IMG/VR virus record: IMGVR_UViG_3300047548_001122
Coordinates: 150,238 to 214,237 of that record
Length of the DNA stretch: 64,000 nucleotides
Reading direction: 5' to 3' (one strand)
In this document: positions 11,866 through 49,437 of the stretch, piece after piece
Layout of the letters: every line of letters begins with the position of its first letter
Numbering within the stretch: position 1 is the stretch's first letter
Made by a program: the position numbers and the translations under genes
The notes under the pieces: generated by a model
What the model saw: the letters and a program-made list of their open reading frames with translations, nothing else
Database searches by the model: none
Told to the model about the DNA's origin: nothing

Positions 11866-11894
11866 GATAAATACTCCATTATAAGTGGAGATTT
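11866..11894 (+). promoter_or_regulatory. T4-type late promoter overlapping an SD-sequestering hairpin
   Basis: GATAAATA (11866-73), then CTCCATT-ATA-AGTGGAG stem containing the GGAG SD. Confidence 0.7.
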
Positions 11895-11896
11895 AA

Positions 11897-13081
11897 ATGG
11901 CAGGCAATGCAATAGAAACCGCGAAACAAGAAAACGGATCAAAAGTTTATTTCGAATTAGTAATAGAAAACGGAAAAGACCCGGACAAAGATTTTGCTGT
12001 TTTAGCGACAGCTGTAAAAAAAGTATATTCTAATGTAAATAATGAGTGGATGGAATCTTATGCGAAACAGGCACGAGCCTTGAAAGAATATATTGGTAGA
12101 AATAAGGGTTATGAGTACTCCCGTGATGATGGGTTTATGCCATTTATTGAAAACATTGCGAAACAAAAATGTGGTGTTTCAGTTAAAGATCGTTGGGACC
12201 CTGCTGACATTTACATGGTAAAAAAATCCAAAAGAAAAGAAATTGAAGCCAAAATAAAACAGATAACATCCACTCCAGATAAAGATACAAACCTATTGGC
12301 ATTAAATGATTACATGAGAGAACTGATGCAATCTCTTGATATGTTACCAGTTTCATTAAAAGCTATTAAAAAATCCACAACAAAGGCTAAAGCTGAACCT
12401 GCGAACATAGGAGCTAAAGGTAAAAAAGTTTCTTTTGAAGTTGTTCCAGGTTCAGTAAAATGTTTATTAGATTTTGGACATAAAACTCCAAACGAATTCG
12501 ATACGGGTGAATTTGCATTTGATTTTAAAGTTGGTGATGAAGAGATTCACGGACAAGCTCGTAACTTTCAGTATTCAAAAGCAAGAAACTTAGTTCAAAC
12601 GGATTTGACACCAAAAGGTCGGTCTGGTGGTGCAAAACTTGGTAAAGTATCTTCTGAAGCATTAGATACTTTTTTAAAAAAAATTAATTTGCCAAGACCA
12701 GCATCTGCTGCCAAAGATCCAAATATTGATTTGCCTGGTGAATGGAAAAAAGAAAATATTGATTATTGGATAAAGTATATAGAAAATCTAAAGAGTGAAA
12801 AGATTGCTGGCCGACCTATTGATTTAGGTGGACTGAAAGTAAAAAATGGTAATAAAGAAACTGTGGGTGCAGAAGAAGTAATCAAAAATGCTATTATATC
12901 TGAAAATAAAACAAGAAGTTCTGCTGGTCGTTTTTCATCCAAGTTGATTGGATTAAGATGGGCTTATACATGGGCTTTAATAGAAAAAAAAGGAAAGATG
13001 GATGAATGGTTACAAACTTTATATTATGGTGCTAAAAAAGAATTTGGTGGTAAAAACGGACCATTTTTAAAAATATACTAA
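11897..13081 (+). CDS. Putative PD-(D/E)xK-like endonuclease
   Basis: DRWDPADIY..PVSLK resembles the restriction-endonuclease-fold catalytic motif. Confidence 0.5.
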   Translation: MAGNAIETAKQENGSKVYFELVIENGKDPDKDFAVLATAVKKVYSNVNNEWMESYAKQARALKEYIGRNKGYEYSRDDGFMPFIENIAKQKCGVSVKDRWDPADIYMVKKSKRKEIEAKIKQITSTPDKDTNLLALNDYMRELMQSLDMLPVSLKAIKKSTTKAKAEPANIGAKGKKVSFEVVPGSVKCLLDFGHKTPNEFDTGEFAFDFKVGDEEIHGQARNFQYSKARNLVQTDLTPKGRSGGAKLGKVSSEALDTFLKKINLPRPASAAKDPNIDLPGEWKKENIDYWIKYIENLKSEKIAGRPIDLGGLKVKNGNKETVGAEEVIKNAIISENKTRSSAGRFSSKLIGLRWAYTWALIEKKGKMDEWLQTLYYGAKKEFGGKNGPFLKIY

Positions 13082-13082
13082 T

Positions 13083-14312
13083 ATGAAATTTTTAGACTTT
13101 TTAGTAGAAGCCAAAAATGAAGGCGCAAATCTACACCTAGAACATCTAGAAGATAATATATTTAATTTTGGTGTAAATGGTACTCGACAATCAATTGATT
13201 TTTTAAGATCATTAAGAGATATGTTAGCAGGTCATTCACAATCAAAAGTAAATATTACAACAAAATGGGATGGAGCTCCAGCTGTTATATGTGGAATAAA
13301 TCCTGAAAACGGAAAGTTTTTTGTTGGAACAAAATCTGTTTTCAACAAAGATGGTAAATTAAATTACACCGATGATGATATTGATAAGAATCATCCTGGT
13401 GGGGGATTAAATGAGAAATTAAAAATAGCATTGGCCTTTTTACCAAAACTTGGCATCAAAGGTATATTACAAGGTGATTTGTTATTTACCAAAGGTGATA
13501 TACAATCAGAAACAATTGACGGACAAAAATATATAAAGTTTCAACCAAATACTATTGTGTATGCGGTGCCAACCGATTCAGTTATGGCTAAAAAAATGTT
13601 AGCCTCTCAAATGGGAATAGTTTTTCATACTTCTTATTCAGGAAGAACGATAGATACATTGAAAGCCTCCTTCAATATTGACATTGGAAATTTAACACAA
13701 ACTAAAGACGTTTGGTTCCGAGATGCTTCTTTTGTTGATGCGTCTGGTACTGCAACATTCACCGATAAAGAAACTCAAGCAATAACCTCTCTATTATCTC
13801 AAGCAGGTAGAGTTTTTCAAACCATAAATCCTGTCGTGTTAAATAGAATATCCTCTGGAATATTTAAAGAACAAATTAAGACATTCAATAATACAAAGAT
13901 TAGATCAGGACAAAAAATAACAAATACTGGCCAACATGTTTCAGAATTAATTAAATATATTGAAGATAAACTAAACAAAGAAATACTTGTTGCAAAAAAA
14001 GAAGATACAAAGAAGAAAAGAATTGCCGAAAAGAATGAAGTGATGAGGTTCTATAGAGGAAGTGCCAATCAATTAAAATCTGTTTTTGATTTGATGAACT
14101 TAATAGTTGATGCTAAGTTAATGATAATAAGAAAATTGGAATCAATCAAATCTTCAGTAGATACCTTTGTTAGAACAGAAGATGGTTATAGAGTTACTGG
14201 TCCAGAAGGGTTTGTGGCAGTAGATAGAATAAGTGGTGGTGCATTGAAGTTAGTTGATCGACTAGAATTTAGTCAGACCAACTTTAATGCCGCAAAAAAT
14301 TGGAGCAAATAA
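13083..14312 (+). CDS. Ligase-like nucleotidyltransferase (DUF6267-like) with capsid-targeting N-terminus
   Basis: TKWDG (motif I KxDG), QGDLLF (III), PEGFV (IV), LKLV (V); N-terminus MKFLDFLVE. Confidence 0.65.
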   Translation: MKFLDFLVEAKNEGANLHLEHLEDNIFNFGVNGTRQSIDFLRSLRDMLAGHSQSKVNITTKWDGAPAVICGINPENGKFFVGTKSVFNKDGKLNYTDDDIDKNHPGGGLNEKLKIALAFLPKLGIKGILQGDLLFTKGDIQSETIDGQKYIKFQPNTIVYAVPTDSVMAKKMLASQMGIVFHTSYSGRTIDTLKASFNIDIGNLTQTKDVWFRDASFVDASGTATFTDKETQAITSLLSQAGRVFQTINPVVLNRISSGIFKEQIKTFNNTKIRSGQKITNTGQHVSELIKYIEDKLNKEILVAKKEDTKKKRIAEKNEVMRFYRGSANQLKSVFDLMNLIVDAKLMIIRKLESIKSSVDTFVRTEDGYRVTGPEGFVAVDRISGGALKLVDRLEFSQTNFNAAKNWSK

Positions 14313-17053: not shown

Positions 17054-17685
17054 ATTTTACTTTTGGTATTCTTACAAAATACGATGATGAAGAAAAACTA
17101 AAAGAAGTTATAGACTCGATACACAATCTAAACATTCCGGAAAATGGTGGTGATTATCAAGTTTTGGTAATAGGCGAAAAGAAAGTAGAAGGATCAAAAT
17201 ATGAGAGGTACATTTATTTTGATGAAACTGCCAAACCAGCCTGGATAACCAAAAAGAAAAATTTATTGGCTCGTGCCGCAAATTTTCAAAACATTGTTTT
17301 AATGCACGATTACTTTGTTTTTGATAAAGATTGGTATAAAAACTTTTTAGAGTTTGGAAATGATTGGGACATTTGTTCTTGTCCACAATATCTAATAAAC
17401 GGTAAACGACATTTTACCGATTGGGTTTGTTGGGATTCACCTTTATTTCCGAGATATACTTCATTACATTATGATGATTGGTCACATGTGAATTACATGT
17501 ATCAATCTGGCGGTTTCGTTGTTGCAAAAACACAGTTGATTATTGATAATCCATTCAATGAACAATTAGGTTGGGGTCAAGCTGACGATGTTGAATGGTC
17601 TCTCCGAGTGAGACATAGATACAAGTATGTTTGTAATGGAAAAAGTATAGTGAGACATAATAAGGTACATCGTGATGCGAAATAA
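17050..17685 (+). CDS. GT2-like glycosyltransferase
   Basis: WITKKKN..LMHDY..GQADDVEWS. Confidence 0.7.
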   Translation: MNFTFGILTKYDDEEKLKEVIDSIHNLNIPENGGDYQVLVIGEKKVEGSKYERYIYFDETAKPAWITKKKNLLARAANFQNIVLMHDYFVFDKDWYKNFLEFGNDWDICSCPQYLINGKRHFTDWVCWDSPLFPRYTSLHYDDWSHVNYMYQSGGFVVAKTQLIIDNPFNEQLGWGQADDVEWSLRVRHRYKYVCNGKSIVRHNKVHRDAK

Positions 17686-19045
17686 ATTAATTATATTTGA
17701 CTTAGATGGTGTTTTGATTGAATCTAGAGAATTGCATTATCACGCTCTTAATGATGCATTAAGAAAAGTCGATGAACGTTATGTAATTGACCGAGAAGAA
17801 CACCTCAGTGTTTATGATGGTTTAAACACCACTAGAAAACTTGAAATGTTGACCGAAAGAAAAGGTCTGCCTACGAGTTTCTACGATCAAGTATGGCAAG
17901 ATAAACAGTCAGCAACTTTTGAATTAATCAAACAGTTTCCAAAAAATCCAACCTTAATAGAATTTTTCAGTAGTCTAAAATCGCAAGGTATAAAAGTTGC
18001 CGTTGCAAGTAACTCTATACGTGAAACGGTAAAGCTTGCTTTAATATCTATAGGTGTGTTAGAATATGTAGATTACTTTGTAAGTAATGAGGATGTTAGG
18101 AGACCCAAGCCATATCCAGAGATGTATTGGCAATGCATGACCGTTTTAAATGCATTGCCAAAAACTACAGTTATCTTTGAAGATAGTCACATTGGTAGAG
18201 AGGGTGCTTTAAATTCTGGAGCTCACTTAATTCCATTAAAAGATTCTTTTGATTTGACCAAAGACAAAATAGACGATGCGCTTGATATATTAAATGGAAT
18301 TAAAAAAACAAATATACCATGGAGAAATAAAAAAATGAATGTATTGATACCAATGGCAGGCGCAGGTAGTAGATTTGCTGCAGCAGGTTATACTTTTCCA
18401 AAACCTCTAATCGAAGTTCGTGGAAAACCAATGATTCAGGTTGTTGTGGAAAATCTTAATGTTGAAGCGCACTTCATTTTCATTGTACAAAAAGAACACT
18501 ACGAAAAGTATAATCTAAAACAATTGTTGAATCTTATTGCTCCAGGTTGCGACATAATCCAGGTTGACGGTATAACAGAAGGTGCTGCGTGTACAACATT
18601 ACTCGCAAAAGAACTTATTAATAACGGTGAACCTCTATTGATGGCAAACTCGGATCAATTTGTTGAGTGGAATTCCAATGAGTGTTTATATGCATTTACT
18701 GCTGATACTATCGATGGTGGTATAGTTACTTTTGAAGCCACGCATCCAAAGTGGTCTTTTGCTAAATTGGATGAAAATGGTTTTGTTTCAGAAGTTGCGG
18801 AGAAAAAACCAATCTCGAATATTGCAACGGTAGGAATATATTATTGGAAACAAGGTAGCGATTATGTTAAGTATGCTGAACAGATGATACAGAAAAACAT
18901 TCGTGTCAATAATGAATTCTATGTTTGTCCAGTATTTAATGAAGCAATTGCCGATGGTAAAAAGATAAGAACCAAACATATCGAAAGAATGTGGGGAATA
19001 GGAACACCAGAAGATTTAAATTACTTTTTGGAGAACCATAAATGA
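17672..19045 (+). CDS. HAD phosphatase fused to sugar-phosphate nucleotidyltransferase
   Basis: FDLDGVL, KPYPE, FEDS; then IPMAGAGSRF..PKPLI..GIGTPEDL. Confidence 0.9.
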   Translation: MMRNKLIIFDLDGVLIESRELHYHALNDALRKVDERYVIDREEHLSVYDGLNTTRKLEMLTERKGLPTSFYDQVWQDKQSATFELIKQFPKNPTLIEFFSSLKSQGIKVAVASNSIRETVKLALISIGVLEYVDYFVSNEDVRRPKPYPEMYWQCMTVLNALPKTTVIFEDSHIGREGALNSGAHLIPLKDSFDLTKDKIDDALDILNGIKKTNIPWRNKKMNVLIPMAGAGSRFAAAGYTFPKPLIEVRGKPMIQVVVENLNVEAHFIFIVQKEHYEKYNLKQLLNLIAPGCDIIQVDGITEGAACTTLLAKELINNGEPLLMANSDQFVEWNSNECLYAFTADTIDGGIVTFEATHPKWSFAKLDENGFVSEVAEKKPISNIATVGIYYWKQGSDYVKYAEQMIQKNIRVNNEFYVCPVFNEAIADGKKIRTKHIERMWGIGTPEDLNYFLENHK

Positions 19046-19770
19046 GAGTTGCTGTCGTATTGACCGGACACCTAAGGTGCTGGAAACAAGTGTTTCCGAA
19101 TTTTAAAGAAAAAGTAATTGATCGATATAACCCAGATATATTCATTCATACTTGGGATGAAGAAGGCTGGTGGATACCTGGTGATAAACAAAATGAAAAA
19201 GGTTTCTTTGAGGGTACACCTGAGATTGTAGATCAAGAAGTGATTGATGCTTACAAACCTTTATACTTTGTAAAAGAATATTGGGACGATTTTAATCAAC
19301 ACTTCGAACAGTGTGGAACTTATTTTAAAAACTTCGCACACAGACCAAAAAATATACTTTCGATGTATTATAAAATGCATCAAGGATTTTCTTTGGTTGA
19401 AAAACATCTGGCACAACTACAGGGAAATTATGATCTAGTCATTCGTATGCGACCAGACATGGTTTTTCATGAGGATCTTCCTGATTTTAATATGGGAACT
19501 TTCTATACTATTGCTCACAGAAATCATCTAGGTCAAGGAACTGGAGATTTGATGCAAGTTGGTAGTGTGGGACAAATGTTATTCTTTACAAAAATTATTT
19601 GTTTTATTTCTGAATTATATAAACAAACAGACTTATTATGTCCTCATGTTATAACTGAACAACATATAACAAATTTAAGATTGAACTGGAAAGAATTTAA
19701 TATCAACAAAACTTTAATGCATACGCCGAAGGGTGCTTATGTAGAAATGGATAAAATAAATGCTGAATGA
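19042..19770 (+). CDS. Glycan-biosynthesis-associated protein
   Basis: VAVVLTGHLR..DIFIHTW..YDLVIRMRPD; within the GT cluster. Confidence 0.6.
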   Translation: MRVAVVLTGHLRCWKQVFPNFKEKVIDRYNPDIFIHTWDEEGWWIPGDKQNEKGFFEGTPEIVDQEVIDAYKPLYFVKEYWDDFNQHFEQCGTYFKNFAHRPKNILSMYYKMHQGFSLVEKHLAQLQGNYDLVIRMRPDMVFHEDLPDFNMGTFYTIAHRNHLGQGTGDLMQVGSVGQMLFFTKIICFISELYKQTDLLCPHVITEQHITNLRLNWKEFNINKTLMHTPKGAYVEMDKINAE

Positions 19771-20434
19771 AATTTTAAAATTAGATGATGGTCCAATTAA
19801 GTATGAGCCAAGTGGCCGTGGACATATTAAGATGGTGGGACATTCTGTGCCATACAGTATTATGCAAAAAGAATTTGATTTTTTACATAATATCATTGTA
19901 GAAAATAATTTACAAAGAGGTTTCGAATTAGCCACAGCATTCGGTATTTCCGGTACAGCAATAGGCACAGCTTTCAAAAAAACAGGTGGAAAGTTTGTAA
20001 CCATGGATGCGTATATTGAAGAGAAGTATGATAACGCAGGAACGTATGAACATTTCCAAAAAGAAGTTTATGAAAAGTCTGATGGATATAAAAGTGTAAA
20101 TTATCTCATAGATAAATTTGAATTAAGAGATACGATGTTTGCTGAAATTGGTTGGTCTCCAGACGATGTTGACAGTATAGTTGGAAAACATTTCACGGAA
20201 AAATTAGATTTTGTATTTTTGGATGCTGGACATTTTGGCGACCAGATGATTAAAGATATTAAAGAAATAAATAAACACTTAGATGAAAAATTTGTTTTTG
20301 TGTTCCACGATATTTACCCTTGGAGTTGCACACAAGAAGTTCATAATCTGTGTATAGAATTGTTTGGAAAAGATATTGATATTAAACTTCCTTATCCGGA
20401 AGGAGAAAATTTAGGCATAATTTCATGTTTATAA
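19760..20434 (+). CDS. Class I SAM-dependent methyltransferase (Methyltransf_24-like)
   Basis: ELATAFGIS, DFVFLDAGH, VFHD. Confidence 0.75.
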   Translation: MLNEILKLDDGPIKYEPSGRGHIKMVGHSVPYSIMQKEFDFLHNIIVENNLQRGFELATAFGISGTAIGTAFKKTGGKFVTMDAYIEEKYDNAGTYEHFQKEVYEKSDGYKSVNYLIDKFELRDTMFAEIGWSPDDVDSIVGKHFTEKLDFVFLDAGHFGDQMIKDIKEINKHLDEKFVFVFHDIYPWSCTQEVHNLCIELFGKDIDIKLPYPEGENLGIISCL

Positions 20435-20889
20435 TTTCACATAGAGCTAATTTAAACGGTCCAGACCCATCAATCGAAAATAAACCTGAATCAATTGTTC
20501 ACGCTATCGATCAGGGATTTTCGGTTGAGGTTGATCTTCGAATGAAAGATCAAAAACTATATTTTGGACATGATGAAGCTCAATATGAAACTGATATTAA
20601 TTTTTTAAAGAAGTACAAACAATATCTATGGATTCATTGTAAAGAAATGGAAACCATGGAGTTTTGTCTTGAACAGGCTCTACACTGTTTCTGGCATAAC
20701 GATGATGATTATACACTGACAAATTACAGATATGTCTGGGCATACCCCGGAAAAGAACCTGTCGGCAAACTAACGATAATGGTGATGCCAGAAAGGCACT
20801 GGAGTCCAGAAGAAACCCTATCAAAAAAACCATTTGGAGTATGCACAGACTACCCTTATGCGTATCAAGATATTATAAATAAGAGATAA
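20425..20889 (+). CDS. Glycerophosphodiester phosphodiesterase-like protein
   Basis: ISHRAN..EN..VEVDL..GHD..WIHCK..GVCTDY. Confidence 0.75.
   Translation: MFIISHRANLNGPDPSIENKPESIVHAIDQGFSVEVDLRMKDQKLYFGHDEAQYETDINFLKKYKQYLWIHCKEMETMEFCLEQALHCFWHNDDDYTLTNYRYVWAYPGKEPVGKLTIMVMPERHWSPEETLSKKPFGVCTDYPYAYQDIINKR
20874..20881 (+). promoter_or_regulatory. T4 late promoter
   Basis: Exact TATAAATA 33 nt before the 914-aa ORF. Confidence 0.7.
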
Positions 20890-20914: not shown

Positions 20915-23659
20915 ATGAAATTTAAAGACTTTCTAACAGAAAAGAAAGAAGTACATGCCGTAATGGCCTTTGGGAGAATGAATCCCATAACTTCTGGCCA
21001 CGAAAAATTAGTCAACGCTGTCAAAAAAGTTGCTGCCAAAGTTGGCGGTTCACATATTATCGCACTATCACATTCTCAAGACCCAAAGAAAAATCCTCTC
21101 ACAGCCGCACAAAAAGTCAAATACGCCAAAGGTGCATTTCCTGGCACAAATTTTGTTGCTGCATCTAAAGACGCACCTACATTCTTTGAACACGCCGAAA
21201 AACTATACAAACAAGGTGTAACACATTTACATATGATTGGTGGTTCTGATCGCGTAGAAGAATATAACAAATTACTTCACAAATATAATGGCACACATAA
21301 AGGTGCTCGTTTCAATTTTAAAACCATCGAAGTACATTCTGCTGGTGAACGTGATCCTGATGCAGATGGCGTCGAAGGAATTTCTGCAAGTAAGATGCGT
21401 GAGGCAGCAAGTAAAGGAGACTTTAATACTTTTAAGAAAGGTGCTCCGTCAACAATGTCAGTCGATCTAATGAAACAAATGTATAAAGATGTACGCAAAG
21501 GTATGAACCTTAAAGAAAGTATTAATGAAGAATTTGAAGAACTTTTGATTGAAGGTGTTCACGACAAAGGTATTTTTAAAGCTGTATTTTTAGCAGGTGG
21601 TCCAGGTTCAGGTAAAGATTATGTATTGAGTAATACACTTGATGGTCATGGTTTAACTGAAATCAATTCTGATAAGGCTTTAGAATTTTTAATGGACAAA
21701 AAAGGTCTCGATAAAAGAATGCCTGCAAGTGAAACGGAAGCTAGAGATAAAGTTAGAGCTAAAGCAAAAAATGTTACAGAGCTTCGTCAAAGACTTGCAT
21801 TACAAGGAAGAAATGGACTAATCATTAATGGTACTGGTGATGATGTTGAAAAAGTAACAAGAATCAAATCTAAGTTGGAAGAATTAGGTTACGACACTTC
21901 AATGATTTTAGTGAATACGAATGATGAAGTATCTGCTCAAAGAAATATTGAACGTGGTCAAAGAGGTGGTCGCACAGTACCAGAAACCATTCGTAAAGAA
22001 AAATGGGACAATGTTCAAAATGCTCGTACTGAATATGCAAAACTTTTTTCTAATAATTATATGGAGTTTGATAACTCCGAAGATTTGAGACAAGCTCCTC
22101 CTGATGTTGTTAAAAGTAAAAAAATGGAGATGATGCAACTGTTTAAAAACGTACAACAGTTTGTTGCACAACCTCCTCAATCACCTGCTGCACAAGAGTG
22201 GGTAGCAAATGAATTAGAACAAAAAGATACTCTTAAACCACCAAAAAATGGTGTTGAACAAGTTGTACCACATGGTTCGAGTGCAGCAGAAGAAGCCAGA
22301 AAATTAGGATTACAATATTATGGTTTCGGTAGATATGGTAAAAACGGAAAAACTACACACCGTTCCATTCATGATAAACTTGTACAAGTTACTGATAAAA
22401 AACCAGAACAACCTAAACTACCTACACCTGGTTCTTCACCAATTTCAAACAAAAAAAATGTTTCAGAAGAAATTAATATTGATGAAGAATTTAACGAAAT
22501 GCTTGATTCTTTAGATGAAGATTTACGTAAATGGTTTGACCCAAAACATCCAGAAGGTGGTTGGAAAAGAATTAACTCTAAAGGTGAAGCTATAGGTCCT
22601 TGCGCTCGTGAACCAGGTGAACCAAAACCAAAATGCATGTCAAACGAAAAGAGAGCTAAGTTGAGTAAACAAGAAAGAGCTTCTGCTGTTGCTGCAAAAC
22701 GCAAACATGATCCTATTGCAGATAGATCGGGTAAAGGTGGTAAACCAGTAAACGTTTCCAATTTTGGAAAAGGTAAATTGTCTGAATCTGTAACAGTTTC
22801 AATTACTGGTGATACTGTTGATGAAGTTAAAGATTTCTTCAACACAATGGGATCAAATTTAAATACAACTACAGAACAATATGCATTATCAGATTCCAAA
22901 AAAGAATTGATAACTCTGGGTAAATTTACTCAACCATTTGGTGAGAAAATGGAAAATACCACCATTACAAATGATATGGTTGAAAATATGCTTGAACAGA
23001 AAGAACCTAATTTACTCAAAGACAAGAGTGGTAAAGTTAGGGTATTCATGTTAAGATCGGTAGCGGCTAAAGAAGCTCATACAAGTCAAGGTACAGTTTT
23101 AAAGTATAAAAACGGTTATGTCGTTAAACTAAAAGAGGAGATTGAAGATGTTGAAGTTTATAAAGGAACTATTCGGAATTGGATTGAAGAATCCAGAAAA
23201 ACATGGATTGGAGGGAGCAACCAGAGCACCCAACGAGGACTTCTCACAGAGAGTGGAACAATATCAAACGGAAGTTCCGAAGGTAGAGGAACCGAAAGTA
23301 GAAGAATTGAAAGTGGAGAAACCAAAGAAGAAACAACCATCCAAGAAGCCTGCGAAAATAACTCCACAACCGCAACCAAAAAAATCACCCTCGCAGAAAT
23401 CAAACAGAGGCAGAAAGCCAAACACCAAAAACAAATCGACGAAATAGATCGAGGTATTGAACCTGGCATATCAATGGCTGGTGCTGGCGAAGGCATCGGC
23501 CGTGATATGGGTGAAAAAATTAAAAAAAGGTCACATAAAGTTACTGTTGTTGAATTAACTGGTGATGAAACAACAGCATCTATTGGTGACCAAAAAGAAG
23601 ATGAGTTAAAGAAAAAAGGTATCTCACTAACTACATTTAAAAAGAGAAACTACATATGA
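20915..23659 (+). CDS. Multidomain polyprotein: HIGH-type nucleotidyltransferase + zeta-toxin/PNK-like P-loop kinase + small modules
   Basis: MKFKDFLTE N-terminus; FGRMNPITSGH..GSDR..ISASKMR; LAGGPGSGK..INSD..RGGRTVP; acidic linkers LKESINEE, LLIE, SLDE, KLSE. Confidence 0.8.
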   Translation: MKFKDFLTEKKEVHAVMAFGRMNPITSGHEKLVNAVKKVAAKVGGSHIIALSHSQDPKKNPLTAAQKVKYAKGAFPGTNFVAASKDAPTFFEHAEKLYKQGVTHLHMIGGSDRVEEYNKLLHKYNGTHKGARFNFKTIEVHSAGERDPDADGVEGISASKMREAASKGDFNTFKKGAPSTMSVDLMKQMYKDVRKGMNLKESINEEFEELLIEGVHDKGIFKAVFLAGGPGSGKDYVLSNTLDGHGLTEINSDKALEFLMDKKGLDKRMPASETEARDKVRAKAKNVTELRQRLALQGRNGLIINGTGDDVEKVTRIKSKLEELGYDTSMILVNTNDEVSAQRNIERGQRGGRTVPETIRKEKWDNVQNARTEYAKLFSNNYMEFDNSEDLRQAPPDVVKSKKMEMMQLFKNVQQFVAQPPQSPAAQEWVANELEQKDTLKPPKNGVEQVVPHGSSAAEEARKLGLQYYGFGRYGKNGKTTHRSIHDKLVQVTDKKPEQPKLPTPGSSPISNKKNVSEEINIDEEFNEMLDSLDEDLRKWFDPKHPEGGWKRINSKGEAIGPCAREPGEPKPKCMSNEKRAKLSKQERASAVAAKRKHDPIADRSGKGGKPVNVSNFGKGKLSESVTVSITGDTVDEVKDFFNTMGSNLNTTTEQYALSDSKKELITLGKFTQPFGEKMENTTITNDMVENMLEQKEPNLLKDKSGKVRVFMLRSVAAKEAHTSQGTVLKYKNGYVVKLKEEIEDVEVYKGTIRNWIEESRKTWIGGSNQSTQRGLLTESGTISNGSSEGRGTESRRIESGETKEETTIQEACENNSTTATKKITLAEIKQRQKAKHQKQIDEIDRGIEPGISMAGAGEGIGRDMGEKIKKRSHKVTVVELTGDETTASIGDQKEDELKKKGISLTTFKKRNYI
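23148..23447 (+). CDS. Nested +1-frame Lys/Pro-rich small protein
   Basis: GAGGAG SD 7 nt before ATG 23148; MLKFIKELFG amphipathic start, VEEPK repeats, basic tail. Confidence 0.55.
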   Translation: MLKFIKELFGIGLKNPEKHGLEGATRAPNEDFSQRVEQYQTEVPKVEEPKVEELKVEKPKKKQPSKKPAKITPQPQPKKSPSQKSNRGRKPNTKNKSTK

Positions 23660-24183
23660 AGTCATTTACTCAATTCATAAACGAAGAAGTTGAAATTCTG
23701 GATGAAATGCCTGGTGCCAATATGGACACCAGAGCGGTTCATCAACATCTGAAAAAACAAGGATGGAAATTAACCAGAAGTTCTGGCAATCATGATGTGT
23801 TTACTCATCCAGATGCTAAACATCACATTCCCGTTCCTCGTCACAAACAATTGAAAGCTCCTTTAGTTCGTGGTATCTTAAAACAAGCTAAAGTAAATGA
23901 AGAAGTTGAATTGGATGAAACTGCTGCATGGCAACGTAAAGAAGGTAAAAATCCTGAAGGTGGATTAAACCGTAAAGGTATCGAATCGTATCGCCGTGAA
24001 AATCCTGGTTCTAAACTATCGATGGCTGTAACTACTCCTCCATCAAAACTAAAACCAGGTTCAAAGGCTGCAAAGAGAAGAAAATCCTTTTGTGCAAGAA
24101 TGGGTGGTATGCCTGGTCCAATGAAGGATGAAAAAGGTCGTCCAACAAGAAAAGCATTATCTTTGCGTAAATGGAACTGCTAA
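23656..24183 (+). CDS. Capsid-targeted two-module protein: HicA-family toxin domain + KSFCARM module
   Basis: MKSFTQFINE; LKKQGWKLTRSSGNHDVFTHP..IPVPRH..LVRGILKQA (HicA); EEVELDE linker; AAWQRKEGK..RKSFCARM..LRKWNC. Confidence 0.8.
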   Translation: MKSFTQFINEEVEILDEMPGANMDTRAVHQHLKKQGWKLTRSSGNHDVFTHPDAKHHIPVPRHKQLKAPLVRGILKQAKVNEEVELDETAAWQRKEGKNPEGGLNRKGIESYRRENPGSKLSMAVTTPPSKLKPGSKAAKRRKSFCARMGGMPGPMKDEKGRPTRKALSLRKWNC

Positions 24184-25482
24184 ATGGCACAGTTTAGAAC
24201 CGACAAAAACATTATCGATTCGGGTCAAGTATTTACTCGATATGAGATAATGATGTTATCTGATAGGCTGACACCATCTGGTACAGCCACAGATGCGTTC
24301 GGTCGTTTACGTGTTGCTGAACCACATACTCTTTTTGATTCACAACATCAAGACGTTGAAAATGATAAATGGGATACACTCATTACAGGTTCGGGCACCA
24401 AAACACATTTACCAAATGAATCTGTAATTGCTTTAGAAATTGGTACTGCAAATAACGATGGTATTATTCGTGAAACACTAAGAACAATGCCATACCAACC
24501 AGGCAAATCATTGTTGATTATGAGCACATTTGCTATGGGACAACCAAAAGCGAACGTTGTTCAGAGAGTAGGATATTATGGAGCAAATAACGGAATTTAT
24601 TTTGAAAACGATTCTGGAAATAACTATGTTGTATTAAGAAGTTCTGTTACAGGAAATGTTGTAGAAACTAGAGTTGCACAAACAAATTGGAATGTGGATA
24701 AATTTGATGGTACGGGATATTCGAGTCAGGGAACAGGACCAGAACACGTTGATGGAATAAATGTAAACAAATCAAATCTTTTTTGGATTGATATTGAATG
24801 GCTAGGCGTTGGTGATGTTCGATGTGGTTTTTTGAATGACGGCCTATTAAAAACTGCACACATATTTCATAACGACAATAAAAACAATACAACTTATATG
24901 CGTAGTGCAATTCAACCATTGCGATATGAAATATTTAACAAAGGTGTTACAACATCAAATACGCTGATGCGTCAAATTTGTTCTACAGTCATATCCGAAG
25001 GTGGTTATACACAAATTAATCAATCAAGGTCAGCATCAAATCCTTTGGCTGGTAAAAACTTAACTGTTAGTATTAATAACCCAATGGTAAGCCTTCGGTT
25101 AAAAAATGGTAGAACAAATGCTGTCGTTGTACCTGTTGCAATTGATATGTATGGATTACAAGCAACAGCATTTAAATATAGAGTGTATGAGAATGTCACA
25201 AGTTTAACCGGTCCATCATGGGTTACAACCGACGCCGCAAGTGCAGTTGAGTATGATATATCGGCAACGGCAATGACTGGTGGAACTTTACTTAAAGAAG
25301 GTATTTTCAAAGGATTAGAAGTTGCAAAAGAAGTTAATTTGTTACAACTATTAGATGGTGTTATACAACTAACAAGAAAAATAAATGCAAACACTGGCGA
25401 CATATTCACGGTTGCAATAGAACCAACAACAAACAACGATGATGCTATCGTAGCATTATCATGGCAAGAACACATTAATTAA
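24184..25482 (+). CDS. Probable virion structural protein (beta-rich)
   Basis: DAFGRLRV..YQPGKSLL..EWLGVG..ICSTVISEGG pattern in late region. Confidence 0.6.
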   Translation: MAQFRTDKNIIDSGQVFTRYEIMMLSDRLTPSGTATDAFGRLRVAEPHTLFDSQHQDVENDKWDTLITGSGTKTHLPNESVIALEIGTANNDGIIRETLRTMPYQPGKSLLIMSTFAMGQPKANVVQRVGYYGANNGIYFENDSGNNYVVLRSSVTGNVVETRVAQTNWNVDKFDGTGYSSQGTGPEHVDGINVNKSNLFWIDIEWLGVGDVRCGFLNDGLLKTAHIFHNDNKNNTTYMRSAIQPLRYEIFNKGVTTSNTLMRQICSTVISEGGYTQINQSRSASNPLAGKNLTVSINNPMVSLRLKNGRTNAVVVPVAIDMYGLQATAFKYRVYENVTSLTGPSWVTTDAASAVEYDISATAMTGGTLLKEGIFKGLEVAKEVNLLQLLDGVIQLTRKINANTGDIFTVAIEPTTNNDDAIVALSWQEHIN

Positions 25483-25497
25483 AAATAGGAGACTCAA

Positions 25498-26904
25498 ATG
25501 TTTCAAGACAAACTAACAAGAGAAATTGCTGCAGCTGCTGCACAAATCAAAACAGAACCACCAAAGAATGAAGTTAATTCTGAGTCTGTTGAGGGTGCAG
25601 TCGTTTCTGTTATGACGAATGAAGAACTAAAAGGCAATCAACACAAGATTGATGCTAACAAAAACGGCAAAGTTGATGCACATGACTTTAAACTTCTTCG
25701 TGCCAAGAAAGGTAAAACGGTAGAAGAAGGCATTAAAGGTGCTGGTATAGGTGCTGCTGTAGGTTCTGTTGCTGGTGGACCGATTGGTGCAGCAGTTGGT
25801 GGTGCTTTGGGGCATGTAGCAGGTGAAGTTCTATCAAGTGCTAAGAATAAAACAAAAGCTATGTATCGTATTGCAAAAGGTCCTTCGATGGCCGACAGCA
25901 AAATAAAGAAAGAAGAAGTTGAAGAACTCGATGAATTGTTTGGAAAAGGTAAATTACCAGCAATTGCAGCATATCACAAAGAAAAAGGTGCTGAAGCTAA
26001 AGGTAAGATGGAAACAATTAGAAGTGGTAACACTAAACTTCCTGTTCCAAAATCTACATCTGCTAAAATCTTTTCTAAAGATGCTGAAGCTAAATATCAT
26101 TCAACTCAGGAGAAAAGAGCAAAATCTTTGATGAAAAAAGAAGAAGTTGAATCCGTTGAAGAGGGATTTGGTGATCTAGTTAAAGGTATTAAACGTGTCG
26201 TTGCCGGTAAAAAGAGTCCTAGTGCCGTAAGAGATGCACACTTAGCAAAATCTGCTTTTAGTACAGATCCGAAAGTTAAAGAGCGTGAAGGTCGCCGTTA
26301 CGATAAAGTGGATAACTTCATGATGAAAAAAGAAGAAACGGAATTGGATGAAGCCTTTCCAACTGTAGCTGATGCTAGAAAACGTATGGCTGCAAAAGAA
26401 AGTGGTTTCGAGAAAAAGAAAATTTCTACTGGTACAGTTTACTCACGTAAGTATAAGGCAGAACCAGAAGAGAATGATGAAGCGCCAAAGAAAAAGGCCA
26501 AGACCATGAAAGAAATGTTGAGTATCTATTCAGCAGGTGGCGCCGAAGCTTTGGTAGAAAATCTCATGATCGAAGAACCATCACAAGATGAATATAAAAA
26601 GGAAGTTGAAACTGCTCAGGCAAAAGCTGACGGTAAAATTCGTAACGATAAAGGTATAGCTAAAGCAGCATCACAGGGTGTAAAGATGGAAGAAGTTGAA
26701 ATTGAAGTTCTTGATGCAGATGAAATCAATGGAGTTCAGATTGACAATATTGAAGAGCGCCACATGACTGATGCTGAAATGGATAAACGTGAAGAAATCG
26801 TTAAGTCAATGAAAAAAGGTATTCAAGGTTTCAAAGATCGTTATGGCGATAAAGCAAAAAATGTAATGTATGCTACTGCAACCAAATTGTCCAAAAAGGA
26901 TTAA
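25498..26904 (+). CDS. Modular polyprotein with repeated KKEEVExxxE linkers (putative head internal protein)
   Basis: EF-hand-like DANKNGKVDAHD, glycine zipper and several basic modules separated by acidic linkers. Confidence 0.7.
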   Translation: MFQDKLTREIAAAAAQIKTEPPKNEVNSESVEGAVVSVMTNEELKGNQHKIDANKNGKVDAHDFKLLRAKKGKTVEEGIKGAGIGAAVGSVAGGPIGAAVGGALGHVAGEVLSSAKNKTKAMYRIAKGPSMADSKIKKEEVEELDELFGKGKLPAIAAYHKEKGAEAKGKMETIRSGNTKLPVPKSTSAKIFSKDAEAKYHSTQEKRAKSLMKKEEVESVEEGFGDLVKGIKRVVAGKKSPSAVRDAHLAKSAFSTDPKVKEREGRRYDKVDNFMMKKEETELDEAFPTVADARKRMAAKESGFEKKKISTGTVYSRKYKAEPEENDEAPKKKAKTMKEMLSIYSAGGAEALVENLMIEEPSQDEYKKEVETAQAKADGKIRNDKGIAKAASQGVKMEEVEIEVLDADEINGVQIDNIEERHMTDAEMDKREEIVKSMKKGIQGFKDRYGDKAKNVMYATATKLSKKD

Positions 26905-26906
26905 AC

Positions 26907-28334
26907 ATGAAGAAGATGTCTGACGTTTTCAAATCCATTCGTTTTGCCAAAATGGACCCAAAACACGATAAGCCCGAAATTGGTGGTTCGAAAGATGACG
27001 AGGAACATTATACTGTTGGTGAAAAGGAATATGAACAACAGGTAAAACATGTAAAAAAGCGTGCTATGCAAGAAGAAAAGAAAGACAAATATGATGAAGG
27101 TGAATATGACCGAGAAGGCGATATGGCTAAATCTGATCTTCGTTCTATCATTGCAAATGCAAAAAGATTGCATGATATGATCGAAGATTCGGCTAACCTT
27201 CCTGAATGGGTGCAGTCTAAAATTACTGTTGCTGAAGATTATATTTCTACAGTTGCTAATTATATGACATCAGAAATGAGTGAAGGGGTATCTGATAAGT
27301 TGTACAAATCTCATCAAGATTTGCGTAAGAAGAGTGGGTTACCTCATCCCGATTACTACAAAGCATTAGGTAAATCTTATGACATTGAAGATGATAAAGA
27401 ACGCCTTACACATCAATCTGAATTAAAGAAAAAATATGGTGTGAAAGAAGAGGTTGAACTTGAAGAGTCCTCTAAATTTGCAAAAATTTTTGATAAGAGA
27501 GTCAAACAAAGAGAACTCAATAAATTACCTAAAGAACCAAAAGGTGAATATGAACGTAAAGTGGACAAGTATTTGAAGAAGAAATATAACAAAGAAGAAG
27601 TTGAACTTCAAGAAGGTCGTCCATCACAACGCCATCCATTAGAGGGTCATGAGTATCACAAAAAGTCTAATGAAGAATTGATTGGTATTGCTAAAGATGC
27701 ACATGCGGCTGCTGAAGCAATGAAGGGTCACAGTACCAGAGCAGAAAACAAATATCGTGACCAAGCAAATGATTCTGCAACAGTACGTTATTTCCGACAA
27801 AAGAGTGGTATGCCTGACTGGTACAAAAAGAAGTATGGTCATGTCAAAGAAGGAGTAGAACTTGAAGAGGGTTTACAACAAACTCTTAGAAAAGTTGTTC
27901 CTGGTTATGCAAAGAAACAAATAAACGATAAAATGGACCGTGAAAAGTTTGGTAGAAGAGATGTGGATAAAGACGAGAATTATTATCGTTATAAAAAAGT
28001 CCTCGACAAATTAAAAAAAGAAGATGTTGAACAATTAGAAGAAAAGAATGTTCCAACTTCTCCAGAAAAATGGGCTCAAGCCAAAGCACAAGCAAAGGCC
28101 AAGTTTGACGTTTATCCTTCTGCCTATGCAAATGGTTGGGCTGCAAAGAAATATAAAGCAATGGGTGGTGGTTGGAAATCAGTCAGTGAAGAATCTATTT
28201 TAGAGTCTCGTAAGGCTGAAATTGTCAAAAAGATAGTTAAGAGTAAAAAAACTAATAGTGATGATAAATTTGAACCTAACCCTATCATGTCGAAAGATGA
28301 AGATAGGGGCAGAGATAACATAAATAACAAGTAA
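26907..28334 (+). CDS. Modular polyprotein with repeated KEEVELxE linkers (putative head internal protein)
   Basis: EGDMAKS..LPEWVQSKIT module, HPLEGHEYH module, YPSAYANGW..GGGWK module; four KE(E/G/D)VE(Q)LxE linkers. Confidence 0.7.
   Translation: MKKMSDVFKSIRFAKMDPKHDKPEIGGSKDDEEHYTVGEKEYEQQVKHVKKRAMQEEKKDKYDEGEYDREGDMAKSDLRSIIANAKRLHDMIEDSANLPEWVQSKITVAEDYISTVANYMTSEMSEGVSDKLYKSHQDLRKKSGLPHPDYYKALGKSYDIEDDKERLTHQSELKKKYGVKEEVELEESSKFAKIFDKRVKQRELNKLPKEPKGEYERKVDKYLKKKYNKEEVELQEGRPSQRHPLEGHEYHKKSNEELIGIAKDAHAAAEAMKGHSTRAENKYRDQANDSATVRYFRQKSGMPDWYKKKYGHVKEGVELEEGLQQTLRKVVPGYAKKQINDKMDREKFGRRDVDKDENYYRYKKVLDKLKKEDVEQLEEKNVPTSPEKWAQAKAQAKAKFDVYPSAYANGWAAKKYKAMGGGWKSVSEESILESRKAEIVKKIVKSKKTNSDDKFEPNPIMSKDEDRGRDNINNK
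28319..28326 (+). promoter_or_regulatory. T4-type late promoter
   Basis: CATAAATA before ORF 28359. Confidence 0.5.
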
Positions 28335-29127: not shown

Positions 29128-29520
29128 ATGGTTTTTGATAATTTGACTAGTGAAAATATAATGCTTTATGCAATGAAGATTTATGATAGACCAGATTGCA
29201 TCATGAGTGAGTTTAAAGAAGATATGAAACGATTCAACTATTTAAAAAGGTTGTTTCGTAGGTATAGAAAAATAGGTGAAATAAAAGAACGTTTAGTTCT
29301 GAATCACTTGGTTGTTCTTTATAACGTTTTTGGTGCTGAAGCAATGACCAGAATGTTATTTTTTAAAATGTCAAAAGATGACCTACCAATAGTAAAAACA
29401 TATCTTTTATTTTTAAGTTGTATGCCAGAAATTGTAAAGGGTATAAAAGGACAAGATATACTTTCTTCCGATATACCTGTTGATTTAAAGATAGCTGAAG
29501 TTTTAAGAGAAATAAAATGA
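29128..29520 (+). CDS. Conserved T4-like phage hypothetical protein
   Basis: EFKEDMKRFNYLKRLF..ERLVLNHLVVLYNVFG. Confidence 0.7.
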   Translation: MVFDNLTSENIMLYAMKIYDRPDCIMSEFKEDMKRFNYLKRLFRRYRKIGEIKERLVLNHLVVLYNVFGAEAMTRMLFFKMSKDDLPIVKTYLLFLSCMPEIVKGIKGQDILSSDIPVDLKIAEVLREIK

Positions 29521-29744
29521 CCAACGAATTTAAAAAACAATGTGGTGAAGGAATGTATTGGTGCAACACTGATAAAAAGTGTAAACCAATACAGGAAGAT
29601 ATGCCCACAAATAATGCTGGAGGTGGTGCTGTTGCAGGCATTGGTGTTGGTCCACAAGGTGAACCTGGTATAAACAAAAAGAAAAAAAGAAATTTAATCC
29701 CTTTAATGGCCTTTATGAGAAGAAAAGCAAATGTGGCTTCTTAG
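29517..29744 (+). CDS. Hypothetical two-module protein
   Basis: CxxGMYWCxxxKKCK module, IQE, then PTNNAGGGAVAG module. Confidence 0.6.
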   Translation: MTNEFKKQCGEGMYWCNTDKKCKPIQEDMPTNNAGGGAVAGIGVGPQGEPGINKKKKRNLIPLMAFMRRKANVAS

Positions 29745-49436: not shown

Positions 49437-49437
49437 T

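What the first reader, a model, noticed from the sequence alone, without database searches (positions are those of the whole stretch)
20915..28334. Head-packaged 'cargo polyprotein' arrays: unrelated mini-domains strung between a repeated protease-site linker
Seen in sequence: the ORFs at 23656, 25498 and 26907 are strings of ~40-90 aa unrelated, mostly basic modules separated by a stereotyped acidic linker. The linkers are EEVEILDE, EEVELDE, KKEEVEELDE, KKEEVESVEE, KKEETELDE, KEEVELEE, KEEVELQE, KEGVELEE and KEDVEQLEE; looser versions (LKESINEE, LLIE, SLDE, KLSE) bound the domains of 20915. ORFs 20915 (MKFKDFLTE), 23656 (MKSFTQFINE) and also 13083 (MKFLDFLVE) begin with a peptide resembling the T4 internal-protein capsid-targeting sequence (MKTYQEFIAE-type), and an exact TATAAATA late promoter precedes the block. 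Established knowledge: T4 prohead protease gp21 cleaves after (I/L)-x-E, and internal proteins are injected with the DNA (IPI blocks GmrSD). Inference: these are precursors loaded into the prohead and cut into roughly 20 separate peptides and enzymes delivered at infection, a modular effector / anti-defence payload rather than ordinary 'hypothetical' proteins.
Basis: partly seen in the sequence, partly recalled or inferred. Interest (0 to 1): 0.92.

Follow-up and report, generated by a model that had tools for sequence, protein, structure and literature searches.

The report
Protease-linked cargo polyproteins in T4-like phage
A freshwater T4-like phage encodes late proteins built as strings of unrelated small modules, each joined by a short acidic linker ending in the cutting motif of the phage's own head protease; this looks like a shuffled, virion-packaged cargo made as polyproteins, an arrangement I did not find described in the papers I could search.

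Summary

- **Genome:** a complete 214-kb freshwater T4-like phage with a gp21 (S77) head protease and gp23.
- **Start peptides:** only three ORFs in the genome (window 13083, 20915, 23656) begin with a T4 internal-protein-like targeting peptide.
- **Linkers:** 9 of the 10 acidic linkers in the proteome lie in ORFs 23656, 25498 and 26907. The tenth lies in a head-core gene near gp21.
- **Promoters:** late-type NATAAATA motifs bracket the block 20915-28334.
- **Relatives:** the same modules occur in other orders, other ORFs or alone. They are almost always preceded exactly by [LIVM]-x-E: 172 of 173 instances in an unbiased search, and 45 of 48 in related loci.
- **Junction equivalence:** the junction after a linker equals the junction after the N-terminal targeting peptide.
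- **Exchange:** single modules are up to 91% identical in DNA where the backbone is 68%. Contigs from other lakes join modules linker to linker.
- **Virion evidence:** homologues in cyanophage S-SCSM1 were detected in virions by published mass spectrometry.

Cleavage, head location, injection and any anti-defence role remain untested. ORFs 25498 and 26907 lack the T4-type start peptide. ORF 24184, inside the block, looks like an external lectin-fold structural protein, not cargo. I rate this a new variant of the T4 internal-protein system.

The parts
20874..20881 (+). Late-promoter-like TATAAATA, 33 nt before ORF 20915
   Evidence: NATAAATA occurs 30 times on the + strand and 6 times on the - strand of the genome. 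Eighteen copies lie within 60 nt upstream of ORF starts, including gp18, gp19 and gp22.
20915..23659 (+). 914-aa polyprotein. Parts: 9-aa targeting-like peptide MKFKDFLTE (20915-20941); HxGH-type nucleotidyltransferase (20942-21553); P-loop NMP-kinase/Zeta-like module (21554-22234); unknown module (22235-22519); basic Cys-containing module (22520-22786); two further unknown parts (22787-23137, 23138-23656).
   Evidence: Pfam, PHROG and PDB hits. Junctions LLIE|, SLDE| and KLSE| are conserved as [LIVFM]xE in all aligned homologues. The nucleotidyltransferase is 39% identical to the S-SCSM1 virion NMNAT-like ORF91.
23656..24183 (+). 175-aa polyprotein. Parts: 10-aa peptide MKSFTQFINE (23656-23685); linker EVEILDE (23686-23706); HicA-fold module (23707-23919, ending in linker EEVELDE); DUF6321 module (23920-24180).
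   Evidence: Pfam HicA_toxin E 3.9e-13 and DUF6321 E 3.3e-23. The HicA module sits in the downstream arrays of L006, L008 and L015, after a linker. DUF6321 is 48% identical to the end of S-SCSM1 virion protein ORF29.
24184..25482 (+). 432-aa virion structural protein (phrog_1645). All-beta, two lectin-like jelly rolls. No targeting peptide and no linkers, so not part of the arrays.
   Evidence: AF2 pLDDT 78.8. Best Foldseek match is the receptor-binding domain of phage TM4 gp23, followed by lectins and phage carbohydrate-binding modules.
25498..26904 (+). 468-aa array. First part holds an EF-hand/dockerin-like loop and a glycine-zipper segment (25498-25935). It is followed by modules 25936-26163, 26164-26352, 26353-26757 and 26758-26901. 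Linker sites end at 25935, 26163 and 26352.
   Evidence: The last module is preceded by [LIV]xE in 7 of 7 homologues. There is no T4-type start peptide.
26907..28334 (+). 475-aa array. N-terminal part 26907-27467, then modules 27468-27614, 27615-27869, 27870-28043, 28044-28205 (weak DUF5872) and 28206-28331. Linker sites end at 27467, 27614, 27869 and 28043.
   Evidence: An unbiased search found 5039 representative clusters. Modules 237-321, 322-379, 380-433 and 434-475 are preceded by [LIVFM]xE in 172 of 173 instances.
28319..28326 (+). Next late-promoter-like motif CATAAATA, before ORF 28359. It marks the end of the unit.
13083..14312 (+). 409-aa DUF6267 protein with a 9-aa targeting-like peptide MKFLDFLVE. 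Third predicted cargo protein, outside the stated coordinates.
   Evidence: Pfam E 1.6e-113. In 40 of 40 IMG/VR homologues the start reads M[KN]Fx[EDQ][FY][LI]xE.
11866..13081 (+). GATAAATA motif (11866-11873) and ORF 11897 (394 aa), upstream partner of ORF 13083.
   Evidence: Weak similarity to S-SCSM1 virion protein ORF90 (25% identity, E 5e-5).
29517..29744 (+). 75-aa stand-alone copy of a Cys-rich module (CxxGxYWCxxDKKCKPI) that begins arrays in other phages.

Best explanation
ORFs 20915, 23656, 25498 and 26907, and separately ORF 13083, are late-expressed precursors of virion cargo built on the T4 internal-protein principle.

Proposed steps, all inferred:
1. A short N-terminal peptide of the T4 targeting-sequence type docks the precursor onto the scaffolding core of the prohead.
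2. The phage's gp21 protease then cuts after Glu at every exposed [LIVM]-x-E.
3. These sites are presented in stereotyped acidic linkers, typically K-E-E-V-E-L-D-E.
4. About 15-20 small, mostly basic proteins of 5-10 kDa are released, plus a few enzymes: an HxGH nucleotidyltransferase, a P-loop kinase and a HicA-fold module.
5. The products stay with the DNA and leave through the tail at infection. Pieces this small could pass the portal channel without much unfolding.

The linker also works as an in-frame cassette junction. Its DNA core, GAA GAA GTT GAA, recurs at every junction, so modules can be swapped, deleted or moved between arrays and between phages without breaking frame or processing.

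Shown here: the architecture, the junction rule, the shuffling, co-occurrence with the protease, the late promoter motifs, and virion detection of homologues.

Inferred: targeting, cleavage, retention in the head, ejection, and what each module does.
For: - T4-like genome with an S77 protease (E 3e-35) and gp23. The catalytic motifs GELxHP and GVSSR are kept, and gp23 has LTE|A as in T4.
- T4 gp21 cuts after L/I-x-E. The 10-aa targeting sequence depends on residues 4 and 7 for targeting and 8 and 10 for processing (PMC9026906). ORF 23656 has F4, F7, I8 and E10. The 9-mers of ORFs 20915 and 13083 keep the same pattern one residue shorter, conserved in 40 of 40 homologues.
- The genome-wide concentration of linkers and start peptides is given in the observation check.
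- Junction rule in related loci: 45 of 48 homologous module instances are preceded exactly by [LIVFM]xE, and 33 of 36 when the upstream neighbour is unrelated.
- Junction rule in the top 150 hits of an unbiased search of 1.84 billion representatives: 172 of 173. In 159 distinct contexts, P1 is E in 159, P3 is L/I/V/M in 158, and P2 is free.
- A boundary I had set arbitrarily (residue 71 of ORF 26907) shows no such motif in 123 instances. This serves as an internal control.
- The same module follows a linker in one phage and follows the start peptide directly in another. Examples: MKSFKSYITE| in L007 and MKNFRVLKE| before the DLRxWF module.
- P1' is Ala in 72 of 261 linkers. T4 gp22 is cut at a Glu-Ala bond.
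- The K-E-E-V-E-L-D-E coding pattern occurs in at least 120 IMG/VR contigs. Seven of 10 larger ones, including both complete ones, encode S77. The other three are 28-47% complete fragments.
- Virion mass spectrometry of S-SCSM1 detected the syntenic block ORF89-93, 95 and 97, plus ORF29 (PMC9602691).
- NMNAT/cytidylyltransferase-like proteins were also found in virions of S-CBWM1, S-SZBM1 and S-CREM2 (PMC10665884).
- Shuffling and recent exchange are seen.
Against: - There is no direct evidence of cleavage, head location or ejection for any of these proteins. The S-SCSM1 supplement holds no peptide-level data.
- ORFs 25498 and 26907 lack the T4-type start peptide. Their conserved N-termini (xSDVFKSIRF followed by TVGE, and MQFxNxITRKVAE in relatives) are only candidate alternatives.
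- A glycine-zipper, membrane-like segment in ORF 25498 is odd for a soluble head protein.
- The same operon carries an apparently external lectin-fold protein, so operon membership alone does not mean head cargo.
- The authors of the proteome papers caution that abundant late proteins could co-purify with virions.
- Many [LIV]xE triplets also occur inside modules, so the motif alone does not define cutting.
Confidence: 0.62

Rival explanations
1. The arrays are cut by gp21 inside the prohead, but the pieces serve assembly and DNA packing rather than acting on the host. They would be extra scaffold or core material and small basic counter-ions for the 214-kb genome, like T4 gp22, gp67 and gp68 fragments and the bulk role once assumed for internal proteins.
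For: - Most modules are small and basic, pI 9-11.
- The same linker type occurs in a head-core gene next to gp21 and in gp22-like acidic stretches.
- T4 core proteins are cut into many fragments.
- No function could be assigned to most modules.
Against: - The modules are sequence-specific, conserved families. They also exist as stand-alone genes in phages without an S77 protease, such as a T7-like cyanopodovirus and phage C72C1.
- They turn over and move horizontally far faster than the backbone. This is the pattern of conflict genes, not of counter-ions.
- Enzyme and HicA modules are included.
Confidence: 0.2
2. The ORFs are ordinary uncleaved multi-domain virion or late proteins, and the acidic K-E-E-V-E-L-D-E stretches are flexible or helical spacers with no protease role.
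For: - Acidic linkers between domains are common.
- No cleavage data exist.
- Two arrays lack the T4-type start peptide.
Against: - A spacer need not keep an invariant Glu and a hydrophobic residue two places before it at the exact module boundary in 172 of 173 cases while P2 varies freely.
- The junction after a linker is interchangeable with the junction after the N-terminal targeting-like peptide.
- The motif equals the known gp21 site and this phage's own gp23 site.
- The arrays co-occur with S77.
Confidence: 0.1
3. The linker is conserved chiefly at the DNA level, as a short recombination site for cassette exchange. The products are cytoplasmic late proteins that are not packaged.
For: - All nine linkers share the core GAA GAA GTT GAA.
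- Joints in other lakes' contigs fall in or next to linkers, for example 27845 to 28017 with 7 shared letters and 26149 to 27609.
Against: - The junction is kept at the protein level with different codons and with degenerate linkers lacking the EEVE core, such as NITE, MVQE and VIKE.
- Homologues are found in virions.
- This explanation does not account for the T4-like start peptides.
- It is compatible with the best explanation rather than opposed to it.
Confidence: 0.05

Closest known systems
T4 internal proteins IPI, IPII, IPIII (and Alt) with the capsid targeting sequence, processed by gp21
   Same: - T4-like phage with an S77 protease.
- A 9-10-aa start peptide of the MKTYQEFIAE type, ending in [LI]-x-E.
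- Late expression.
- Small basic products.
- Hypervariable gene content between relatives.
   Different: T4 internal proteins are single proteins, each with its own gene and its own targeting peptide. Here up to about 6-8 unrelated modules share one reading frame and, at most, one targeting peptide. They are separated by a stereotyped acidic linker that repeats the cleavage motif. Two arrays have no T4-type start peptide.
Inner-body and ejection proteins of giant phages phiKZ, 201phi2-1 and SPN3US, cut by a gp21-like protease
   Same: Many head proteins are processed after Glu by a diverged gp21 homologue, with multiple cuts per protein, and the cargo is ejected into the host.
   Different: - The motif there is S/A/G-x-E.
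- The cuts remove or shred propeptides of 20-254 residues and leave one mature protein. They do not release a string of autonomous modules.
- No repeated linker is described.
Polyvalent proteins of phages and conjugative elements (Iyer et al. 2017, PMC5512222)
   Same: Several unrelated domains sit in one polypeptide, are predicted to be delivered with the DNA, and are predicted to be processed.
   Different: - Those proteins are typically built of large enzymatic domains with zincin-like or other embedded peptidases.
- The paper has no mention of cyanophage, Synechococcus, HicA or zeta toxin, only one passing mention of T4-like phages (their ADP-ribosyltransferases), and 'prohead protease' occurs only in its reference list.
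- No embedded peptidase domain was found here.
Virion-associated NMNAT/cytidylyltransferase-like proteins of cyanomyoviruses (S-CBWM1, S-SZBM1, S-SCSM1, S-CREM2)
   Same: The first enzyme module of ORF 20915 is homologous (39% identity to S-SCSM1 ORF91). It was detected in virions by mass spectrometry.
   Different: Neither of the two papers I read for this point describes a targeting peptide, cleavage or a polyprotein context. One has no occurrence of 'internal' or 'cleav'; the other gave no virion-related hit for the terms searched. Many cyanophage copies are stand-alone, about 185 aa, and lack the start peptide.
Polyproteins of RNA viruses and retroviruses (own knowledge)
   Same: One translation product is cut by a virus-coded protease at short repeated consensus sites into separate functional proteins, in some cases inside the assembling particle.
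   Different: The protease, virus class and purpose are unrelated. Here module order is not fixed but shuffled between close relatives.

Membership tests
T4-type internal (head-packaged, injected) proteins | Encoded by a phage with a gp21 (Peptidase_S77) prohead protease | tested here: met
   PF03420 E 3.2e-35 at genome 129486-129944. His and Ser motifs conserved.
T4-type internal (head-packaged, injected) proteins | N-terminal targeting peptide of about 10 aa ending in a gp21 site ([LI]-x-E) | tested here: met
   Met for ORFs 20915, 23656 and 13083. Not met for ORFs 25498 and 26907, whose N-termini are of other conserved types.
T4-type internal (head-packaged, injected) proteins | Late transcription | tested here: inconclusive
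   TATAAATA and NATAAATA motifs sit at the right distance and show strong strand and position bias. No RNA data were examined.
T4-type internal (head-packaged, injected) proteins | Physically inside the head, N-terminally processed, and ejected with the DNA | not testable with these tools
   Only indirect support: homologues are in the S-SCSM1 virion proteome. No peptide-level data are held.
Polyvalent proteins (Iyer et al. 2017) | Two to 15 domains of disparate activity in one polypeptide of a phage or plasmid | tested here: met
   Nucleotidyltransferase, P-loop kinase, HicA, DUF6321, EF-hand-like, glycine zipper and many unknown modules.
Polyvalent proteins (Iyer et al. 2017) | Embedded zincin-like or other processing peptidase, and the characteristic domain set of that study | tested here: not met
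   No peptidase domain in any of the four ORFs. The paper does not cover these architectures.
HicA toxin of a HicAB toxin-antitoxin pair | HicA domain above the Pfam threshold | tested here: met
   PF07927 at 49.7 bits against a cut-off of 27, residues 28-79 of ORF 23656.
HicA toxin of a HicAB toxin-antitoxin pair | Adjacent HicB antitoxin gene, in a stand-alone two-gene module | tested here: not met
   The domain is embedded between two linkers in a polyprotein. No HicB hit among the neighbours.
Zeta toxin / epsilon antitoxin | Zeta_toxin domain with a partner antitoxin | tested here: inconclusive
   PF06414 at 46.8 bits, above its cut-off. AAA_33 also matches, the best solved relatives are UMP/CMP and adenylate kinases, and no antitoxin is evident. 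It is best called a P-loop kinase of unknown substrate.
NadR-like NMNAT plus ribosylnicotinamide kinase | NMN adenylyltransferase specificity of the HxGH domain, followed by a P-loop kinase | tested here: inconclusive
   The domain order fits. However, the profile against PDB gives only weak PPAT hits (E 0.003). The NMNAT name in S-SCSM1 rests on CDD cd02167 at E 5.8e-5.

The most novel reading that the evidence does not exclude
T4-like phages of lakes and oceans carry a combinatorial, rapidly shuffled repertoire of injected mini-proteins. One short sequence would serve three purposes at once: protease site, in-frame recombination junction and module delimiter. Any small gene could then be recruited into, or lost from, the head cargo by a single linker-to-linker exchange. 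The thousands of 'hypothetical' small viral proteins related to these modules would be a largely unexplored pool of early-acting host-takeover and counter-defence factors.
Probability: 0.35. Interest if true: 0.9.

Novelty: new variant of a known kind. Interest (0 to 1): 0.8.

Why it matters
- **Annotation.** It would explain a large class of unannotated proteins: 5039 representative clusters relate to ORF 26907 alone, from abundant aquatic T4-like phages.
- **Published proteomes.** It would give a mechanism for the repeated, unexplained finding of enzymes such as NMNAT-like proteins in cyanophage virions.
- **Prediction.** The rule is simple and testable: a start peptide plus [LIVM]-x-E in an acidic linker predicts both which proteins are packaged and where they are cut, directly from sequence.
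- **Follow-up.** Each module becomes a defined, short candidate for an early-acting factor that can be expressed and screened.
- **Wider use.** It extends T4's targeted-packaging principle, already used to load foreign proteins into heads, to natural multi-cargo precursors.

Tried and rejected
- **Naive boundary statistic.** An all-against-all BLAST boundary test gave only weak enrichment. The alignments include the conserved linker itself, and many non-array ORFs were in the set. I replaced it with projections from modules cut exactly at the site.
- **Arbitrary module boundaries.** My boundaries at residues 70/71 and 125/126 of ORF 26907 are not junctions. Homologues show EYDYE before residue 71, not [LIV]xE. 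The N-terminal 187 residues therefore probably hold fewer pieces than I first drew.
- **Module function by Pfam.** Scans of 18 separate modules gave nothing above threshold. The only leads were a weak DUF5872 hit and EF-hand/dockerin and glycine-zipper hints. NCBIfam added nothing.
- **Module function by ESM Atlas.** Look-alikes of two modules are only unnamed 80-100-aa viral proteins.
- **Nucleotidyltransferase.** No PDB hit by phmmer and only weak PPAT hits by profile, so the substrate is unresolved.
- **DUF6267.** The AF2 model was poor (pLDDT 57.8), so I did not fold-search it. The KWDG ligase-like motif remains an unsupported lead, and PDB phmmer gave nothing.
- **Peptide-level proteomics.** The S-SCSM1 supplement has no peptide-level data.
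- **Literature.** Searches for a prior description of targeting peptides or polyprotein cargo in cyanophages or T4-like aquatic phages found none.
- **Tool limits.** A first collection pattern had too few specified bases and was lengthened.

Full report
**What the sequence is.**
- The window is the last 64 kb of a 214,237-bp viral contig with direct terminal repeats, rated complete. Near-identical DNA is found in freshwater and lake metagenomes.
- All substantial ORFs but two lie on the + strand.
- The genome is T4-like. It has a Peptidase_S77 (gp21) gene (E 3e-35) and a gp23 major capsid gene (E 4e-139) in the usual gp20-gp67-gp68-gp21-gp22-gp23 order.
- Against T4 itself, the protease keeps the GELxHP and GVSSR motifs. 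gp23 carries LTE|A, the same triplet at which T4 gp23 matures.

**The observation.**
- A regex for the linker hits ten times in about 61,900 residues of the genome's + strand ORFs. Nine hits are in ORFs 23656, 25498 and 26907. The tenth is in a 271-aa gene between the gp67-like and gp68-like genes, which itself begins MKSLNEFKNLVEE.
- T4 IPII and IPIII, translated from the T4 record, begin MKTYQEFIAE.
- A review of T4 head assembly states that residues 4 and 7 of this 10-mer carry targeting, residues 8 and 10 carry processing, and gp21 cuts after L/I-x-E (PMC9026906). ORF 23656 has F4, F7, I8 and E10.
- The 9-mers of ORFs 20915 and 13083 keep the same pattern one residue shorter. In 40 of 40 IMG/VR homologues of ORF 13083 the start reads M[KN]Fx[EDQ][FY][LI]xE, with the other positions free.
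- With linkers stripped, the 22 pieces I delimited show no similarity to one another. Most are basic.

**Transcription.**
- TATAAATA lies 33 nt before ORF 20915.
- Genome-wide, NATAAATA occurs 30 times on the + strand against 6 on the - strand. Eighteen copies lie within 60 nt of an ORF start, including tail sheath, tail tube and gp22.
- In the window, such motifs precede ORFs 11897, 20915 and 28359. The five tightly packed ORFs from 20915 to 28334 therefore look like one late unit. This is a consensus-level inference, and I did not examine RNA.

**Comparative test of the junctions.**
- I used the conserved ORF 24184 as an anchor and fetched 37 related loci.
- Relatives whose ORF 24184 is 80-88% identical keep the block but differ sharply in the arrays. 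The second ORF is 107 to 372 aa long, and one relative has a 1431-aa array with nine linkers.
- Window modules, cut exactly after the linker Glu, find homologues module by module in other positions and other ORFs. For example, the HicA module lies upstream of ORF 24184 here but in the downstream arrays of three relatives.
- Of 48 distinct homologous instances, 45 are preceded exactly by [LIVFM]-x-E. The figure is 33 of 36 when the upstream neighbour is unrelated to the one here.
- In several phages the same module follows the N-terminal peptide directly: MKSFKSYITE| before the module that follows ELQE| here, and MKNFRVLKE| before the module that follows SLDE| here. The end of the start peptide and the end of a linker are therefore equivalent junctions.

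**An unbiased repeat.**
- ORF 26907 was searched against 1.84 billion representative proteins. It gave 5039 clusters at E up to 0.001 and 281 at E up to 1e-30. Matches were typically one to six separate stretches at unrelated positions.
- In the best 150 proteins, the four linker-defined modules are preceded by [LIVFM]-x-E in 172 of 173 instances, at start positions from residue 7 to 653.
- Over 159 distinct contexts, P1 is Glu in all, P3 is L/I/V/M in 158, P2 is free, and P5, P7 and P8 are mostly Glu.
- A boundary I had drawn arbitrarily at residue 71 shows no such motif in 123 instances. This acts as an internal control and corrects my segmentation.

**Link to the protease.**
By my rough estimate, which I did not compute, chance would give only about one hit in a collection of this size. 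Half of the ORFs holding it have two or more linkers.
- Of ten larger contigs tested, seven encode S77, including both complete genomes. The three without it are fragments estimated 28-47% complete.
- In a pattern-biased sample, the residue after the cut is most often Ala, in 72 of 261 linkers. T4 gp22 is cut at a Glu-Ala bond.
- Modules also exist as stand-alone small genes in phages without this protease. DUF6321 lies right after the capsid gene of a T7-like cyanopodovirus, and a DUF5872-like module occurs in phage C72C1. Atlas look-alikes are 80-100-aa viral proteins.

**Exchange.**
- At the DNA level the backbone aligns collinearly at 66-81% identity, while the array region is a non-collinear patchwork.
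- Single modules are much closer than the backbone. Window 27594-27868 is 90.9% identical to L015, where ORF 24184 is 68%. Window 28017-28190 is 88.5% identical to L013, where the backbone is 70.7%.
- Contigs from four other lake or fish-gut samples, laid at 90% likeness, cover only certain modules. Depth is near zero on the module between them (27868-28023) and on most of ORF 24184.
- Their joints often run linker to linker: 27845 to 28017 with 7 shared letters, 25935 to 26130, 26149 to 27609 and 25703 to 28017.
- By my hand count from that table, not a tool result, about 17 of about 38 joint ends lie in or within 5 nt of the nine 30-nt linker windows, which make up 5.8% of the stretch. The tool warns that such joints come from other organisms. 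Here they show other module orders, not rearrangements of this genome.
- All nine linkers share the DNA core GAA GAA GTT GAA.

**Virion evidence from the literature.**
- In cyanophage S-SCSM1, the syntenic block ORF89 to ORF97 and the array ORF29 are annotated as virion proteins from mass spectrometry of CsCl-purified particles (PMC9602691).
- ORF91 begins MKSFLQFLKE. ORF89 and ORF92 carry KKEEVENVDE and NKEEVELDE.
- Direct similarity exists between ORF 20915 and ORF91 (39% identity, E 1e-33), and between ORF29 and both the basic module of ORF 20915 and the DUF6321 module.
- NMNAT-like or cytidylyltransferase-like proteins were also reported in virions of S-CBWM1, S-SZBM1 and S-CREM2. The authors speculated about delivery into the host but did not mention targeting peptides or cleavage, and they cautioned about co-purification (PMC10665884).
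- The polyvalent-protein study does not cover these architectures. In SPN3US, processing removes propeptides rather than releasing strings of modules.

**What the modules are.**
- ORF 20915: an HxGH nucleotidyltransferase, then a P-loop kinase. The kinase matches Pfam Zeta_toxin and AAA_33, and its best solved relatives are UMP/CMP and adenylate kinases. A NadR-like NAD salvage pair is possible but not shown.
- ORF 23656: a HicA-fold module and DUF6321.
- ORF 25498: opens with an EF-hand/dockerin-like loop and a glycine zipper.
- The remaining modules are unassigned.
- ORF 24184, between the arrays, has no linkers. Its model shows two lectin-like jelly rolls, closest to a phage receptor-binding domain. 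I read it as an external structural protein.

**Verdict.**
- The architecture, the junction rule and the shuffling are real and widespread.
- The most likely mechanism is prohead targeting followed by gp21 cutting at the linkers, giving many small packaged proteins. I put this at about 0.6.
- The effector or anti-defence reading is plausible from the turnover pattern and the enzyme and HicA modules, but it is untested.
- I rate it a new variant of the T4 internal-protein system.

Noticed in passing
window 24184-25482: This ORF lies between the arrays and is a conserved virion structural protein (phrog_1645), also present in cyanomyoviruses and podovirus HMO-2011. Its AF2 model is all-beta with two lectin-like jelly rolls. 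The best Foldseek match is the receptor-binding domain of mycobacteriophage TM4 gp23. In one lake sample, contigs join 24184 directly to 25477, as if the gene were absent there.
   Followed up: partly
G000:C1:127802-128617 (outside the window): A 271-aa gene lies between the gp67-like and gp68-like head-core genes. It begins MKSLNEFKNLVEE and holds EETEEINE and EEVQLEE. This puts the same start-peptide and linker style inside the head morphogenesis cluster next to gp21.
   Followed up: partly
window 13083-14312: The DUF6267 protein with the targeting-like start has an invariant KWDG motif reminiscent of ligase or capping nucleotidyltransferases. PHROG 455 joins DUF6267 and the cytidylyltransferase in one profile. 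The AF2 model was too poor to test the idea.
   Followed up: partly
window 29517-29744, and L007:13296-14852: A 75-aa ORF here is a stand-alone Cys-rich module (CxxGxYWC...DKKCKPI) that opens long arrays in other phages. At the same place, relative L007 has a 518-aa array starting MNRFIEFLIE.
   Followed up: partly
window 48129-49770: This is the only stretch with raised G+C (0.44) and reversed skew. It holds the window's only two - strand genes: a 305-aa Gly_rich_2 domain protein and a 109-aa ORF.
   Followed up: no
window 34358-38257: A 1299-aa protein with five Laminin_G_3 (ConA-like) domains and a TIG domain. It is probably a fibre or adhesin.
   Followed up: no
window 14586-14975: A full-length IscU/NifU_N iron-sulfur scaffold gene (E 5e-52) in the phage, just downstream of the DUF6267 gene.
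   Followed up: no
window 15267-20889: A run of seven genes lies directly upstream of the block. From reading the translations they look like sugar or cell-wall modification genes (glycosyltransferase-like, HAD plus nucleotidyltransferase-like, methyltransferase-like). I did not search them against any family library.
   Followed up: no
window 26907-27023: ORF 26907 and 19 relatives share a conserved start of the xSDVFKSIRF type. In 12 of the 19 it is followed by T[VI]GE near residue 39. This could be a second, longer kind of targeting propeptide.
   Followed up: partly
whole genome G000: NATAAATA shows a 30 to 6 strand bias. The exact TATAAATA is rarer in the window than shuffles predict (3 against a mean of 7.4), as expected if the motif is a functional late promoter avoided elsewhere.
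   Followed up: partly
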